A stretch of DNA of 64,000 nucleotides from Parasitella parasitica NRRL 2501. Taxonomy: Eukaryota; Fungi; Mucoromycota. Shown here in pieces: positions 2,874-46,431 of the stretch. The stretch spans positions 73,676 to 137,675 of the forward strand of contig MU619312.1 of NCBI GenBank assembly GCA_025201805.1, given 5' to 3'. The notes beneath the pieces are model-generated. The model was given only the letters and a program-made list of their open reading frames with translations, had not been told where the DNA came from and made no database searches. Every line of letters begins with the position of its first letter. Within the stretch, counting starts at the first letter, position 1. Position numbers and translations under genes: made by a program.

Positions 2874-4078
2874 TTAATCCATTTCCATATCTATAGTACG
2901 GTCATTACCCGATACAGATAATTCAGTGTGTAGTAAATCCAGCAATACATCAACCATGGGCCTTTGTTTGAATAGTATGACAAACTCTGAAAGGTATCCG
3001 ATTTTTTCGCCTGCTTGTCCTAATGGATCATTTGTTATATCGAAGAAAAGTACATTTGTAGGATACCCAGAGCTTTTATCTTCAAACAATATATCGACGA
3101 GCAATCTTTGATCATAATCATTCAATACTTCAATTTCCACTTTATGTATAGACGTGCTTTGATATCTGATTTCGATAGTATGTGATTTCTTCAGTTGAGC
3201 GACCTCTTTGAGAATCTCCCTCCTAGTGACATAGGCTTGGACTTGGTCGTGCACAATACGGATAAATGACTGGAAACGTATCAATAAAATAAAATAAAAA
3301 GGTTGCTTTACTTATAGATAATAACTTACATCAAAATTATCAGGTAAATATTTGTTTTGTATAGTCAATAAATGTATGAAATTTGGTATAGTGTGATGCT
3401 CTATCAATGGCTGTGTCAAGGTTTGAATTGAATTCGACTGAAGGCCCTCATGGCTTTTTTCATAGACGATATAATAGGATTCTATATACTTTCTATTGTA
3501 GAATGTTTCTAGTCGGATACAGTTATGATTGCCTTTGAATGTGAATATTGAACGGCCAGCAAGACGATGATAACTGATTGCTTCTCGTATACAGCAAATA
3601 TCGACAGTTGACATCATTTTAGCATATACCTATGAATAACAATTGTGAGATACAAGCTATTACACGACCTAGATTGATTACCTCTTTTTCCATATCATCG
3701 AATTCATATTCTGCTACTCTGGTAGGATCTATTGATAGGTATTAATAGTGCTATCGAGGTGGATCACACGCAAAAAAAAACCTTGAATCAATGCTGTAAG
3801 CGAGGATATTGTAATATAAGATAGGTCTTCCTCAAGTAATTCTTTTCTGAGCTGCTGATCTCTGGCTGTTGCAGTTGCCACTGTTGATAATCAAAATTAG
3901 TGATGTGTACGTATATGAGCTTGAAGAATTTACATCTTCTTTTCATCTCGTTGATTTGAGCCTTTAATCTATCATTCTCACTAGGTAAGCTTTGTTTATT
4001 TCGTCAGCAGAGCTAGCACATTGTGTATCTACATGGCATTCATATTTACAAAGTATCTTCTTCCATGTTTGTTTGCAT
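2874..4078 (-). CDS. Kinetochore protein CENP-O/Mcm21-like, multi-exon
   Basis: YHRLAGRSIF...IRLETFY..KYIESYYIV...HHTIPNFI.L...KYL...QAYVTRRE matches the CENP-O pattern. Start codon (4078 or 4066) is approximate. Confidence 0.72.
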
Positions 4079-41216: not shown

Positions 41217-41273
41217 TCGTTTCCACACGGGTAATTTATTCAAATCATGTATCGAGGGATCTTCTCTCTTTTC

Positions 41274-41277
<4 letters not shown>

Positions 41278-41304
<27 letters not shown>
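41278..41304. repeat. (TA)n microsatellite
   Basis: Direct read; lies immediately left of the transposon end. Confidence 0.9.
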
Positions 41305-41305
<1 letters not shown>

Positions 41306-41311
41306 TGTATA

Positions 41312-43554
41312 CAGTGCAACCTGTGAATTTTGTCCATTTAGAAAACACAAATGGCGTTTATTGGAATATAAACATCCATTGGAAAAAAATAAATGGTGTT
41401 TCCTCAAAATTAAATATCGTATTCAAAAGCACATATTATCGTTCCTTAAACCTACATTGCATATCCTCCATAAATATTTTTTGTCTTGTTTTTTTTTTCT
41501 ACTTTTTTAAACTAATTCCCTTCAGAAAAGTCGGAAGGATACTTCTACTTCTTGCTCTGAAGGGGAGTCTTTTAAGAACAGAAACGGTAAAGATACATGT
41601 TAATTTCTGATCAAAACGTTACTAATTTAAGCTATGATGGTAGACACATATGAAAAAATTATAACCGACAATTCAGACGATGATTTTCAGCCATCAGTAG
41701 CCTTTAAATAAAGAAGTATGTATTAGCACATTATATTCATAAGTGCAGAAAATTCATAGCATTTTAAACACCCATTACATTGGTAAACAAAGCAAGAAAG
41801 AGGGCCAAGACGAAATTGGTAGCACAAGCGAGATCAGCTTTCGTAACACCAATGCTCAAGGTCCAATAACAGGTGAATCAGGCAAGAATACACAATCTGA
41901 TGAATGTACCCAATGTTACTGCTTCCAACTCTGACTCTACTGCTACCAAACCTGGTTCTAAAACGAAAAGCTTTGATGATAAAACAAGAAAAAAGGTGAT
42001 GACAGTGAAAACGACGATCAAAAATATATGGAAACCAGAATGTTTGCAGCCATTGTATAATCTAGTGAATACTACTCATACAGTCGTCACTCACACATTT
42101 GCTTTTTCAAAATACATGTTCTTGAAAGAACTGTCCGCAAACAGCAATTTTAACTTGAATGAATTTGTACGAAAAGAATTCTCTGTGGAAGTGTTCTTGT
42201 CTCTGATTGCCCAAAATACTACCCGCAGGGCTGTTAAGCATAAAGACACAACTGCAGAGTAGAGGAACTTCATAGCAAAATATCAACAATCTTACTTGGA
42301 AGACGCAAATTATAATTCCAATCAAACTGGTGAATGCTCAACAAATCGCACTATATGAGTGCACCAAGATTCAAACTGCTTATCTTAACAACATAAAGAC
42401 CCATTTTGGAAATAGATTGCAAACTCTACTAAATAAGCTCTGTGAGAAAAAAGAAAGAGCGGATACCATCCGTAAAGAAATGGCGTCCAATGCTTTTAGT
42501 GAAGAAGCTATTAACAAAGCGATACGACAAAAGGCTTACAATCCCTGTAACCAAGTTATGCAAGCTGTAGCTAAAAAAAAGGCATACCCAACGTTGATAT
42601 TTTGAATGAATCGTCAAAACCAAAAGTACAAACTTTCTTGTCGGCATATCCAGAAAATTACAAGTTTAAAATGGTCTCAATCTTCTACGATGTAAAGGCT
42701 AATCCAAAAAACCACTTCTAAGCCTTTGTTAAACTTGCTGAATTGTTTGAATTGGTGCAGCTAAAGCAATTTCTTTGTTTCCCATCAAGACCGATGTTTA
42801 TTCCTTGCTACATAAAGTTAGACAACAAGATTATCCACTACCATATTATTCAAAGCAAGGAACCTTTTGATACCAAGAAGTCAACTCGAAAACTGAGCAT
42901 CTATTGTCAATCTTAGAATCAAGGCTTTTAAAATTCGAGGATCCTTAAGCTTCAAAAATACTCTTGAAACTGATGGAGTTGGTGCCCGTATTATTAATCA
43001 GAACTGCGATACCTCCCGAAAAGAGCCGCAGTCAAGATGCTGCAAAAGAACGGTTTTAAAGTTTATCTCATTGGCGAATACAAAACATATTCCCTCTGCC
43101 CAAGTTGTGGTGGCAAGCTTGATCAAAAATTTAAACAATCCGAAACCCTATACCCATATCAACACCACAAAATGCCCACTGTAAAGTGTCATGGCCTAGC
43201 AAGGTAAAGCGAAAAAAATATATACTCACGTAACATGGATGGATCATGAAGACTAACCTTCTTCAAGATGTCGAAGCAGTATGTATTCAAGCAATCAAAA
43301 CCGACTATGGAATCGAGATCTTGCAGCTGTATTAAACTTTAGGAAGACTTTAACCTCCTTGAGGCAGACAGGCAGACGTCCGACAATTTTCTCAATACAA
43401 CAAAAACAAAAACTTTCCATCAAGGTTAACGCCCTGGTTATTTAATGCAGGTACGTACTTTTGAATCTAAAACATTTGTTTTTTTTTTGCCAAACGACAT
43501 TCATTTTTTTTTTTTTACTAACGATTTAAACTGACAAAATAATCATTCCAACTG
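41312..43554 (+). mobile_element. Non-autonomous Tc1/mariner-type DNA transposon carrying Fanzor1
   Basis: Left end TA|CAGT-N11-ATTTTGTC-N2-TTTA (41310-41340). Right end TAAA-N2-GACAAAAT-N10-ACTG|TA (43527-43556). Together these form an imperfect TIR with a TA duplication. No transposase inside. Confidence 0.68.
41520..43445 (+). pseudogene. Fanzor1 (eukaryotic TnpB-like RNA-guided endonuclease), decayed
   Basis: Fragments TVKTTIKNIWK..., TAYLNNIKTHF, YDVKANP, CFP...FIPCYIKLD, FKNTLETDGVG, VYLIGEYKT..LCPSC (RuvC-II plus Zn finger) and CHGLAR|C...RLWNRDLAAVLNF (RuvC-III, across the 43204-43267 intron). Stop at 42260-62, frameshifts, and the RuvC-I region is deleted near 43030. 5' start approximate. 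Confidence 0.88.
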
Positions 43555-43578
43555 TAATACTATTTACATTTTAATAAG
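43451..43578 (+). ncRNA. Putative Fanzor omega RNA region (scaffold to element end, plus flank-derived guide)
   Basis: Positional inference only: Fanzor/TnpB omega RNAs span the element right end into the flank. No fold was verified. Confidence 0.4.
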
Positions 43579-43621
43579 GGTAGTATATAAATCCAGACGT
43601 TGACTGTTGTACTAGAGAAAT

Positions 43622-46431
43622 CTATATTTTATCATGCATAGCAGTGCTTATGGGCGATGCTTGGTGAGGAGGAGAGTAGATGGAGGATATAAGTGTGTCT
43701 TTTCTAGCGAGTCCAATTTGATGTCTGGGTAACGGTGGAGGGGGAGGTCTATCCTTTTGGTAATTAGTGGAATTTCGTTGCTGTACTTGCAAATTATCAT
43801 CGATCGTCGTTATCAACGGCTCCGAGCTTGGAATAGCATCGTCATCGATTTTATAGTGCGTTGGTCTGGCACCAAAATCACCTTCAACTGAGCTGTTGTG
43901 AGCTTGTGCTCTGTACTCACGAGTACTGTTATAAATTGGTGGTATAGTAGTGGATGAGGAGGATTCAGCTCTGGAGCGACTTTGATGGTCAGGTATAAAC
44001 GGAGGGTATGGCTGTATTCTTTCGTCCACAGGTATTGTAGACAGTGGTGTCAAAGTCAAAGTTATAGGGTTGCTTTGGGGCCTGATTTCATCAGGCTTAT
44101 GCAGTGCAGATGTGACATGACTGTTGTTGCTGTTATTGCTGTTATTGCTGTTGTTGCTATTAAAGCTGTTGACCCCATTGTAATAGCTCGTAAGCATTTC
44201 TAGTGTATGAGAACTCGTTGTAAGGCGTTTGGAATTTCGGTTGTGTCCTGGGAGATCGCCATTGATATAAAAACTGGCTCTTTGCGAAGACATTGCCATT
44301 AGATTGGTAGAGCTGGTGTCGAGATTTGAAGATGTTGAAGCTCTGTTGCTCTTCTTTTGTTTCCTCCACATGGCCATGCGAGCTGGAGGTTTACCTGATT
44401 CGTCCAACTCATCATCTCCAAGGCCAGTTGCCATGGTAATCAAGTTTTTAACTAGCAACAGCAAGAATATAAAGTAGGCGAGGCAATGGATAGCCATTTG
44501 CATGTAGCCTACGTATTGCTTGACCATACTCGATGCTTCAATATTCGGCAGATAGCATATGTTTAAAAGTAAAACAAGTGATTTAATACAGCCAAACACA
44601 ACATGAAAAGCGTTTACTTGACTATCAGCATGCGGCCATTTGAACAGAAAGCCCAACGTCAGCAGTATTTCAGCTAAAATAATTAGTATGAGCTGTGCCA
44701 ATCCACTCGTCTGAAAGAGCCCAAGCATTGCTGCCACTACTGATTTATGTACAAGAATCACAATGAAAAAGTGAAATGTATCATCGGTATACGGGTTGTA
44801 TAGTGACCCAAATCTGAGCAAGAGTTTCAATTCCGTGTATATAAATGATGCGGGTCGGATCTGAAGCAACTTGATACTGATGAATCCGTAGAGCAGGAAG
44901 GGTACCACAAGAAATATAGCAGCAGAGAGTGTGATGTACCAAAAGGATGGTATCATCAACTGATAAAAGGATACTGTCAAAATTGGCAAATAGAGCAAAG
45001 TAATGATACGGACTAGAATTCCTATAATCAGAACATGAATTGTTACACTAAGAAGCCATGAACAACGTTGAAAATAAAATAAAATAAAACAAACCTATTG
45101 AGAAATCCCACATCTTTTTTGACATGACAGTGAAGCTTTGACGATCATTCATCTTGCCAAGCATGTAAAATACAGCCCAAATAATGCAACACAGCACTAT
45201 GCAAGACATTATGATGATGAGCGCGTAAACAAGAAAGGTGAAAAAGATGGCATTGACGTCAATTCCAGAAGCGGTTGCAAATTTGAGCATGCCTGTGCTC
45301 GTAACATTCACACCATGATCCGTTTCGTTTGCTGCTGTGATATTAGCCAATTGCCGCTTATAAATGCTGTATCTCGGGATAGAAGCAGTTTCTTGCAGTG
45401 GTGATGGCGACGACTGAAATATTCTGTGAATAACGGAATCCAGCCATCTCGACTCGAACAATAGATAGCTCCAAGAGAAATTAGAAGTGAAAAGCGCATG
45501 GAATCGTGGATAATCGATGTTGAGTTGGCCTGCCGCTACAATAAACTGGGCGTAAAATACCAGATCAAGAAATCCAGGTGTCTTTAAGCGTAACACACCT
45601 GGCAGCATGGCATAGTTGGAGCTCAGTAGAAACATATCGTGTTCTCCTCCTTGATGAAATATAGTGAACGAAGCAATCAGGGATATTATAGCTGCAGCGA
45701 CAGTAAATCCAATAGGTAGAAATGTAAAGACGTTTTGCCATGTCGGATGTTGGTAACCGACAGGAGCGAGCTTGATACATATGAGATGTTTGGAGTCTGC
45801 GTCAATTGCTGAGTACTCTGCAGTGATATCAGCCAATGGGTACGGAGCAACATCAGAAAGGTAAAAGGACTAAAAATAGACACACAGAAGAAATATAAAA
45901 TAGTTGGTTGGGTATAATTCTTTTTCTTTTTTTTTTTTTTTTCCTTCTCCAATGACCTACCCGTTGAATACTGAACTCTGTATTTTGATTTATTGGACAA
46001 CCACTTGATACATCACGGCAAAACTGCTGGGCTGGTGCGTGTAATGTTTGAAATCCAAACCTTAATTCAAACATAGAAGCAGCGAATGCTAAATTTAAAA
46101 AAAAAAGTTAATACTATATATAAACATCTTCTCGGGAGGAAATGAGTCTTTTCCTCCAATTGCTTTTTGATCGTTTATATTTACTCGATTCTTGTTGATT
46201 CAAGTTGCTGACTGTGACATTAGACGTGCTGGTAAAATTCAAATGGTAACTCCACGTTTTGACATCGAAATAGCGAGTTACAGAAGACACATCGAACTCC
46301 CCCTGATAGCAGTAAGTGAAATTGGTTGACGGAAACCACACATCATCTAATGACTGTGCATATCGAGAAGGAATTACTGTGAAAATTAATATCAAAAGGA
46401 GATTCAAATGATTTAGGTGAATAAATCTCAT
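43622..46431 (-). CDS. TRP-like / FLC (Pkd2-family) membrane protein with N-terminal ML-like domain, multi-exon
   Basis: Signal peptide, TPGFLDLVFYAQFIVAAGQLNIDYP.F..FTSNFSWS, RFGSLYNPY, multiple TM segments and a disordered tail. Confidence 0.82.

What the first reader, a model, noticed from the sequence alone, without database searches (positions are those of the whole stretch)
43443..43578. Fanzor omega RNA region looks like a spliceosomal intron whose acceptor must come from host flank
Seen in sequence: five nt after the Fanzor stop (TAA 43443-45) is a strong donor, CAG|GTACGT (43451). A U-rich tract follows, then a perfect TACTAAC branch point (43516-22). There is no AG dinucleotide from 43451 through the element end (43554); the first AG is 43577-78, about 22 nt into flanking DNA. 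Established: TnpB/Fanzor omega RNA is right-end scaffold plus flank-derived guide and must be separated from the mRNA. Inference: the spliceosome could define the omega RNA 5' end at the donor, releasing scaffold plus guide as a 3'-UTR intron ending at the first host AG. Alternatively it could perform first-step-only cleavage, as in S. pombe TER1 processing; the ~55-nt branch-to-AG distance is far longer than in the element's own internal intron (~8 nt). I know of no description of this route for Fanzor guide biogenesis; it would be a spliceosomal analogue of bacterial IStrons.
Basis: partly seen in the sequence, partly recalled or inferred. Interest (0 to 1): 0.88.

Follow-up and report, generated by a model that had tools for sequence, protein, structure and literature searches.

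The report
Decayed Fanzor end; intron-like guide precursor
The splice-like signals after this Fanzor gene are real, but the missing acceptor is damage in a dead transposon copy; intact relatives carry their own acceptor just inside the transposon end, so splicing may remove the terminal repeat and join the guide-RNA scaffold to flanking DNA.

Summary
However, the window element (41312-43554) is a dead, twice-deleted copy of a TA-flanked long-TIR transposon. It carries a Fanzor1 related to Parasitella parasitica PpFz1.

Sister right ends in the same genome keep what this copy lost:
- about 45 nt holding GCTAAC...TTCTTAG|GTTAGT;
- a terminal AATCAG 10 nt before the end, where the window has AATCAT.

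The donor CAG|GTA is deeply conserved. It lies at nt 36-41 of the published 49-nt PpFz1 omegaRNA scaffold. The covarying hairpin SL1 lies upstream of it, so the omegaRNA cannot begin at the donor.

In eight Mucorales lineages, CAG|GT...AG brackets the inner TIR (69-160 nt) and leaves 10-14 nt before the flank. Removing it would create a TGCAG/CTGTA hairpin that abuts the flank. Two intron-free, probably RNA, contigs show exactly that form.

Best reading (about 0.55, inferred): an element-encoded intron removes the TIR from the omegaRNA precursor. No RNA data exist here for this genome. Earlier follow-ups of this scan reached the same reading on other copies in this genome.

The parts
41312..43554 (+). 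Non-autonomous, decayed transposon copy. It runs CAGTG...CAACTG between TA dinucleotides at 41310-11 and 43555-56, with imperfect long TIRs.
   Evidence: Copy boundaries come from 9-10 copies in the same genome. The TIR is about 70% identical over 60-90 nt in sister copy C57. There are 13 stop codons in the Fanzor match.
43032..43037 (+). Junction of an internal deletion of about 820 bp. The lost segment encodes the RuvC-I (DPG) part of Fanzor.
   Evidence: The window aligns to L015 344-2155 and 2969-3414 with a 6-nt overlap. The deleted part holds the ORF MLMDPGRRDLLYCM. DNA contigs of run X1 show the same deletion form.
43037..43203 (+). Fanzor exon holding the RuvC-II / zinc-ribbon part (GEYKTYSLCPSCGGKLD...HGLAR).
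   Evidence: ORF list. Weak Pfam Cas12f1-like TNB match, E 0.02. The sister ORF matches the PpFz1 chain 9cf0_P with E 5e-47.
43204..43267 (+). Conserved CDS intron (GTAAAG...GACTAAC...CAAG) after the HGL(L/A)R codon.
   Evidence: The same position is interrupted in P. parasitica, R. delemar, M. mucedo, G. persicaria, L046 and L048.
43268..43445 (+). Last coding exon with the RuvC-III motif WNRDLAAVLNF. The stop TAA is at 43443-45.
   Evidence: PpFz1 match E 2e-10 for the sister ORF.
43413..43450 (+). Homologue of nt 1-38 of the published PpFz1 omegaRNA scaffold. Hairpin SL1 is 43419-43438, followed by the linker and TGCAG (43446-50).
   Evidence: PpFz1 omegaRNA sequence from PMC11423790 Table S3. 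Alignment A2 of 14 sequences. SL1 is 89% paired, 6 of 8 pairs have changes on both sides, and 0 of 500 shuffles reach the score.
43451..43456 (+). GTACGT, the conserved GT(A) directly after T(G/A)C(A/G)G. It is the candidate 5' splice site and equals nt 39-44 of the PpFz1 scaffold.
   Evidence: GT follows the motif in all 15 genomic lineages examined. Within this family it is T in 5 copies, C in 3 and A in 1.
43474..43487 (+). Scar of a copy-specific deletion. About 45 nt of the family sequence (GACAATAAT..GAGCTAACAGATATTTATTCTTAG|GTTAGTGAC..) is replaced by ATTTGTTTTTTTT.
   Evidence: Pairwise alignment with L015, multiple alignment, and a matching contig in run X1 (joint 3414-3470).
43516..43522 (+). 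TACTAAC, a branch-point-like unit of the subterminal repeat inside the right TIR.
   Evidence: TACTAAC in 5 copies, TACCAAC in 3. Repeat units CCAAACGACATTCATTTTTTT and ACTAACGACATTTATTTTTTT are read.
43545..43546 (+). AT where the family has the AG of AATCAG, the lost candidate 3' splice site.
43547..43556 (+). TCCAACTGTA (family TACAACTGTA), the last 10 nt of the right end. It would be the 3' exon; its CTGTA can pair with TGCAG (43446-50).
43577..43578 (+). First AG downstream of the donor in this copy. It lies in flanking DNA.

Best explanation
SHOWN. The window holds a dead, internally deleted copy of a TA-flanked long-TIR DNA transposon that encodes a PpFz1-type Fanzor1. The genome is most likely Parasitella parasitica.
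- The omegaRNA scaffold hairpin SL1 lies in the last codons of the ORF (43419-43438).
- The conserved motif TTAATGCAG|GTA ends the scaffold-homologous region.
- The T-rich tract and TACTAAC belong to the right TIR and its subterminal repeats.
- The lack of an AG results from a roughly 45-nt deletion and a G-to-T change in this copy only.

INFERRED for intact family members.
- Transcription reads through the right end into flanking DNA.
- The spliceosome removes the segment from CAG|GT to the AG that lies 10-14 nt inside the transposon end. This segment is the inner TIR, 69-160 nt, possibly removed in two steps through an internal AG|GT.
- The new junction lets TGCAG pair with the terminal CTGTA. 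That forms a short second hairpin placed directly before the flank-derived guide.
- The result is a PpFz1-like two-hairpin omegaRNA.

The acceptor is element-encoded, not host-derived. The product is the spliced exon pair, not the intron.
For: 1. Fanzor identity. Sister ORFs match PpFz1 (PDB 9cf0) with E 1e-100, 5e-47 and 2e-10.
2. Scaffold homology to the published PpFz1 omegaRNA, and covariation in SL1 across 14 sequences.
3. Eight sister right ends carry internal AGs and a terminal AATCAG.
4. The two P. parasitica copies of the PpFz1 family (L039, L040) stay alike for about 150 nt beyond the published scaffold, through the published "guide". They end at TTTTAG|(T/A)CTAAAAAACTGTA, inside a 113-nt TIR. 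So the natural flank is reached only across the TIR.
5. GT follows the motif in all 15 genomic lineages. An AG lies 10-14 nt before the end in all 8 lineages with a complete end, and the bracketed segment is 69-160 nt.
6. Two Logan contigs from one study (L045, L050) lack the otherwise conserved CDS intron. One starts with a sequencing adapter 55 nt before the ATG. They read GCAG|CTTCACTGTA|flank and GCAG|..42 nt..CTGTA|flank, without GT.
7. Forms with the segment removed fold into SL1 plus a 5-7 bp TGCAG/CTGTA hairpin next to the flank in 10 of 10 lineages. In R. delemar TACGG still pairs with CTGTA.
8. A deposited Mucor mucedo gene model ends in an exon that starts exactly at this acceptor, TTTATAG|TGTC.
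9. The fixed sequence after the unspliced scaffold has no other target in the genome.
Against: - No RNA evidence for this genome. The only run found behaves as DNA: its depth follows copy number and its joints equal genomic deletion variants.
- L045 and L050 have no matching genome, so they could be DNA of lineages without a long TIR. L038, a TIR-bounded DNA contig, shows that the CDS intron can be absent in DNA.
- PpFz1 purified from yeast carries the unspliced sequence and is active in vitro (PMC11423790).
- Donor positions +4 to +6 are weak in several lineages (GTATTA, GTACCT, GTCCAT).
- The AG near the end and the internal AG|GT also occur in the reverse complement of the left TIR. They may therefore exist for the transposase.
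- A second family in the same genome (L063) has no AG in its last 60 nt.
- No genomic copy has the segment precisely removed.
Confidence: 0.55

Rival explanations
1. No splicing takes place. The motif TGCAGGTA is conserved because the Fanzor protein binds it, as in the PpFz1 structure. The branch-point-like and AG|GT motifs are transposase-binding repeats of the TIR. The omegaRNA either keeps the whole TIR as a large loop closed by the long-range helix TGCAG/CTGTA, or it uses the fixed internal sequence.
For: - The PpFz1 RNP from yeast holds GGTAAGCAACAT as part of its scaffold and cuts DNA.
- The unspliced C57 right end folds with TGCAG paired to the terminal CTGTA.
- L050 shows that the loop of this helix tolerates a 33-nt insert.
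- The AG motifs are symmetric between the two TIRs.
- Subterminal direct repeats are present.
Against: - GTA is absent from the two contigs that lack the insert, so the scaffold does not need it. Yet GT is invariant in the 15 lineages that have the insert, while the next bases vary freely.
- The 3-bp pairing TGC/GCA seen in unspliced PpFz1 is not conserved in the other lineages (sequences).
- The fixed internal "guide" matches only the family's own right ends.
Confidence: 0.27
2. The segment is an ordinary 3'-UTR intron, or pair of introns, of the Fanzor mRNA. It bears on expression or mRNA stability only. The omegaRNA is made from another transcript or by another route.
For: - Canonical anatomy in the family consensus: a 60-nt unit GTACGT..GCTAAC..TTCTTAG followed by an 84-nt unit GTTAGT..TACTAAC/CTGAC..AATCAG.
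- These sizes resemble the 64-nt CDS intron.
Against: - It does not explain why the donor sits inside the scaffold region.
- It does not explain why the acceptor always leaves 10-14 nt ending in CTGTA that pair with TGCAG.
- It does not explain how a flank-derived guide would otherwise be joined to a scaffold lying 80-170 nt away.
Confidence: 0.1
3. The intron runs from the donor to the first AG in host DNA, or the spliceosome performs only the first step as for S. pombe TER1. Scaffold plus guide are released as the intron.
For: - In this copy there is indeed no AG before 43577.
- One other truncated family copy (L063) also lacks an AG in its last 60 nt.
Against: - The AG loss is specific to a dead copy.
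- The scaffold homologous to PpFz1 nt 1-38, with covariation, lies upstream of the donor and would stay in the 5' exon.
- An acceptor 22 nt into the flank would discard the part of the flank that should serve as guide.
Confidence: 0.03

Closest known systems
PpFz1 (Parasitella parasitica Fanzor1) and its omegaRNA, Xu et al. Cell 2024 (PMC11423790; PDB 9CF0-9CF3)
   Same: - Protein homologue: E 1e-100 on a 287-aa piece, about 50% identity over 680 residues.
- Same scaffold: hairpin SL1, an A/U-rich linker, then TTAATGCAGGTA.
- Same kind of transposon end...ACTGTA.
   Different: - This is a different paralogous family, and this copy is dead.
- The published RNA was defined in yeast and continues unspliced into sequence that the two native copies share. 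So its "guide" is element-internal.
- Here I propose that the native RNA skips that part.
IStrons: bacterial IS605/IS607 elements that combine a group I intron with TnpB and omegaRNA (PMC10690162)
   Same: One stretch at the transposon right end serves both RNA splicing and guide-RNA formation.
   Different: - In IStrons the intron is a self-splicing ribozyme that removes the whole element from host mRNA and competes with omegaRNA formation.
- Here the signals are spliceosomal, and only the inner TIR would be removed.
- Here splicing would create the omegaRNA rather than compete with it.
- No Rfam family matches.
Spliceosomal 3'-end processing of S. pombe telomerase RNA TER1
   Same: The spliceosome shapes a non-coding RNA.
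   Different: TER1 uses the first step only, to release the 5' exon. Here both steps are expected, and nothing in the intact copies suggests a blocked second step.
Introner-type transposons, DNA transposons that are spliced out as introns (from my own knowledge; PMC10690162 cites transposon-borne spliceosomal introns)
   Same: Transposon terminal sequence carries the splice signals.
   Different: Introners are spliced out of host genes as whole elements. Here an internal piece of the element's own transcript would be removed.

Membership tests
Fanzor1 (eukaryotic TnpB-like RNA-guided nuclease), PpFz1 type | Sequence homology to characterised Fanzor1 | tested here: met
   Sister copy ORFs match chain 9cf0_P with E 1e-100, 5e-47 and 2e-10. 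The window copy matches P0177 at 36-41% identity with 13 stops.
Fanzor1 (eukaryotic TnpB-like RNA-guided nuclease), PpFz1 type | Complete RuvC triad (D, E, D/N) and zinc ribbon in this copy | tested here: not met
   The RuvC-I segment is deleted (about 820 bp). The zinc ribbon CPSCGG and the NRD motif are present. So this copy is a relic, not a working gene.
Fanzor1 (eukaryotic TnpB-like RNA-guided nuclease), PpFz1 type | omegaRNA scaffold at the 3' end of the gene | tested here: met
   Homology to the published PpFz1 omegaRNA. Hairpin SL1 has compensatory changes in 6 of 8 pairs.
U2-type spliceosomal intron (GT-AG) | 5' splice site GT after an exon ending in AG | tested here: met
   CAG|GTACGT at 43448-56. 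GT is present in all 15 genomic lineages. Within the family it is T in 5 copies, C in 3 and A in 1.
U2-type spliceosomal intron (GT-AG) | Branch point CTRAY followed by the first AG within about 10-40 nt, inside the transcript unit | tested here: not met
   In the window copy the AG is lost (43545-46 is AT) and the next AG is 55 nt on, in flanking DNA. The feature is met in the family consensus (TACTAAC/CTGAC...AATCAG) and in P. parasitica PpFz1 copies (ACTAAC..TTTTAG).
U2-type spliceosomal intron (GT-AG) | Removal from RNA shown by junction reads | not testable with these tools
   The only run found is DNA-like. Indirect evidence: contigs L045 and L050 lack the segment, and a deposited M. mucedo gene model uses the acceptor.
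Tc1/mariner-like TA-flanked TIR transposon | TIRs, TA on both sides, a transposase gene | tested here: inconclusive
   TIRs and flanking TA are present in all copies. There is no transposase ORF in the element. No 9-bp duplication of the MuDR type reported for some Mucorales Fanzor elements was seen. The superfamily was not established.
IStron (group I intron plus TnpB) | Group I ribozyme fold at the element end | tested here: not met
   No Rfam match at E up to 1 in 43250-43700.

The most novel reading that the evidence does not exclude
In Mucorales Fanzor1 transposons the guide RNA is assembled by the host spliceosome. An intron that begins inside the omegaRNA scaffold and ends 10-14 nt before the transposon end removes the long terminal inverted repeat, possibly in two recursive steps through a zero-length exon AG|GT. 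Exon ligation then creates the second scaffold hairpin (TGCAG/CTGTA) directly in front of the flank-derived guide. If so, the published PpFz1 omegaRNA would be an unspliced surrogate whose "guide" is element-internal.
Probability: 0.5. Interest if true: 0.88.

Novelty: new variant of a known kind. Interest (0 to 1): 0.62.

Why it matters
How eukaryotic Fanzor nucleases obtain a flank-derived guide is open. Their host transposons need long terminal repeats at the very end, where bacterial TnpB elements place the omegaRNA scaffold.

A TIR-spanning intron would solve that conflict and would tie an RNA-guided nuclease to the spliceosome. It would also change how native Fanzor guides are predicted, because the scaffold and the guide would not be contiguous in DNA. 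The published PpFz1 omegaRNA would then be seen as a surrogate.

The idea can be tested at once with existing RNA-seq of Parasitella, Rhizopus or Mucor.

The window copy itself is an inert relic. Its particular lack of an acceptor has no functional meaning.

Tried and rejected
- RNA test. The look-up of sequencing runs gave one run, labelled "RNA?". Laid on the intact sister copy, its depth follows copy number (about 107 on the 820-bp segment against 350-460 on the commoner 5' part and about 16 in the unique flank). Its joints are the genomic deletion variants. I therefore read it as DNA. No GT..AG joint was listed, so expression and splicing remain untested.
- Processed copies. The exact predicted junctions, with the full segment or only the first unit removed, are absent from the genome at up to 3 mismatches.
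- Fixed internal guide. The 21 nt that follow the unspliced scaffold occur only in the family's own right ends. The 3-mismatch hits are at control level.
- Genome counterpart of the intron-free contig L045. No protein is more than 52% identical. The run numbers appear in no paper.
- Metagenome scan. It returned two further DNA loci with the same architecture and no transcripts. L070 comes from a human-skin metagenome assembly, but it is a fungal Fanzor transposon contig, not human DNA.
- Pfam on the window ORFs gives only a weak TNB match. Rfam gives nothing.
- A 9-bp target duplication (MuDR type) was not seen.
- Joined sequences. Exons were searched apart by reference. Joined forms were only folded inside scripts.

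Full report
**Observation**

- stop TAA at 43443-45;
- CAG|GTACGT with the G at 43451;
- a T-rich tract;
- TACTAAC at 43516-22;
- no AG until 43577-78;
- element end CAACTG at 43554, followed by TA.

The 128-nt AG-free gap is long. Only 8 of 3631 such gaps on this strand of the window reach that length, and a shuffle of the segment gives P about 0.01.

**What the element is**

The copy spans 41312-43554 between TA dinucleotides and has imperfect long TIRs. At least nine right ends and about nineteen fragments of the family lie in the same genome.

ORFs identical to sister copies are labelled Parasitella parasitica in NCBI. The genome is therefore most likely a P. parasitica assembly.

Sister copy C57 (L015) has the Fanzor hallmarks: DPG, an E plus CxxC zinc ribbon, and NRD. 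Its pieces match the solved PpFz1 with E 1e-100, 5e-47 and 2e-10.

The window copy is dead:
- it lacks about 820 bp that encode RuvC-I;
- it has 13 stops in the remaining match.

**Why the window has no acceptor**

I aligned the right ends of the family. The family reads:

...TTAATGCAG|GTACGT..GAGCTAACAGATATTTTTTCTTAG|GTTAGTGAC..TACTAAC..AAACTGACAAAATTAATCAG|TACAACTGTA|flank

The window differs in two ways:
- it lost about 45 nt, covering the first branch point, the first acceptor and the second donor, at 43474-87;
- it has AATCAT instead of AATCAG (43546).

Six of eight sister ends keep AATCAG, and two more keep another AG there.

TACTAAC is one unit of a subterminal repeat and reads TACCAAC in three copies. 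The donor T is C in three copies and A in one.

**Where the omegaRNA scaffold is**

The published PpFz1 omegaRNA (PMC11423790, Table S3) aligns with window 43413-43461. Hairpin SL1 is 43419-43438. It is followed by an A/U-rich linker, then TGCAG, then GTA.

Across 14 sequences from at least ten lineages:
- SL1 is 89% paired;
- 6 of 8 pairs show changes on both sides;
- 0 of 500 shuffles reach the covariation score, and slid controls are far lower.

The donor therefore lies at nt 39 of a 49-nt scaffold, and most of the scaffold is upstream of it. The omegaRNA cannot start at the donor, and the intron cannot be the omegaRNA.

**The native PpFz1 locus**

L039 is the published locus and L040 is a second copy. 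The two remain alike for about 150 nt beyond the published scaffold, through the 22-nt published "guide". They end at TTTTAG|(T/A)CTAAAAAACTGTA and then diverge. The last 113 nt form a TIR with subterminal direct repeats.

So the published guide is element-internal. The true flank lies beyond the TIR.

**Comparative anatomy**

GT follows T(G/A)C(A/G)G in all 15 genomic lineages examined. These come from P. parasitica (several families), R. delemar, M. mucedo, G. persicaria, Helicostylum, and Logan and metagenome contigs.

In the eight lineages with a complete end:
- an AG lies 10-14 nt before the end;
- the bracketed segment is 69-160 nt;
- most long versions hold an internal AG|GT(A/T)A, that is, a zero-length exon.

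When the segment is removed in a script, all ten forms fold into SL1 plus a 5-7 bp hairpin TGCAG(N)/(N)CTGTA directly before the flank. In R. delemar the motif is TACGG, which still pairs with CTGTA.

**Forms without the segment**

Two Logan contigs from neighbouring run numbers lack the CDS intron that P. parasitica, Rhizopus, Mucor, Gilbertella, L046 and L048 all have.
- L045 begins with a sequencing adapter 55 nt before the ATG. It reads ...TTTTATGCAG|CTTCACTGTA|flank for more than 400 nt.
- L050 reads GCAG followed by 42 nt ending in AAAAACTGTA, then flank.

I read both as mRNA contigs. This cannot be proved, because no matching genome exists, and L038 shows that the CDS intron can be absent in DNA. 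Under either reading, GTA is not needed by the scaffold when the TIR segment is absent.

A deposited M. mucedo gene model has its last exon starting exactly at the right-end acceptor.

**What could not be tested**

The only sequencing run found behaves as DNA. There is therefore no direct RNA evidence for this genome.

Other tests led nowhere:
- there are no processed genomic copies;
- the fixed internal sequence has no other target;
- Rfam gives no match;
- the searched literature holds no account of spliceosomal processing of Fanzor guides.

**Verdict**

- The "host-flank acceptor" and "omegaRNA as intron" readings are rejected.
- The wider idea survives in a different geometry: an element-encoded intron that removes the TIR and joins scaffold to guide. 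I hold this at about 0.55.
- The main rival is an unspliced RNA with the TIR looped out by the same TGCAG/CTGTA helix (about 0.27).

Earlier follow-ups of this scan on other copies in this genome (s1-688513, s1-697294, s1-688522) state the same reading. I saw them only after forming mine, and I do not count them as evidence.

Noticed in passing
L039:5755-5907 and L040:6003-6154 (P. parasitica GCA_000938895.1): The 22-nt "guide" of the published PpFz1 omegaRNA is conserved between two genomic copies and is followed by a 113-nt TIR. It is therefore part of the element, not flanking DNA.
   Followed up: yes
window 41305-41311; left flanks of sister copies; L039:1722-1729: The left flank is not random. 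TTGTA or (A/G)TA precedes the TA in most copies and in P. parasitica PpFz1 copies (TTGGTA|TA, TTGTTA|TA), while right flanks vary. In an empty site this would put ATA directly before the right flank, which fits the reported PpFz1 TAM 5'-ATN.
   Followed up: partly
window 43032-43037; G000 C161 and C50 copies: The same deletion of about 820 bp (RuvC-I region), with a 6-nt overlap, is shared by at least three copies. A deletion derivative has therefore itself been copied.
   Followed up: partly
L042:5541-5978 (Mucor mucedo): The deposited gene model P0025 joins the donor of the CDS intron to the acceptor 13 nt inside the transposon end. It finishes with 7 codons that run into flanking DNA.
   Followed up: partly
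L015:3533-3889 (record 7): A contig of run X1 that covers the unique right flank of the C57 copy stops at 3533, at the CAG before TACAACTGTA. In a DNA graph with 31-letter words I would expect it to run further into the element. This is unexplained. It could reflect a second sequence joined at that point.
   Followed up: no
L063 (G000 C22:286500-287700) and L059 (C16): A second Fanzor family in the same genome has a Gilbertella/PpFz1-like TIR (..AAAAAAG|GTAAGC..ACTAAC..). In L063 there is no AG in the last 60 nt before ...AAAAAACTGTA.
   Followed up: no
window 41265-41309: The element sits at the edge of a (TA)n microsatellite.
   Followed up: no
L038:1-30 and 2857-2886; L046:1-43 and 3329-3371: These Logan contigs end in perfect or near-perfect inverted copies of their own ends. 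The assemblies break inside the long TIRs, which marks them as DNA contigs of whole elements.
   Followed up: yes
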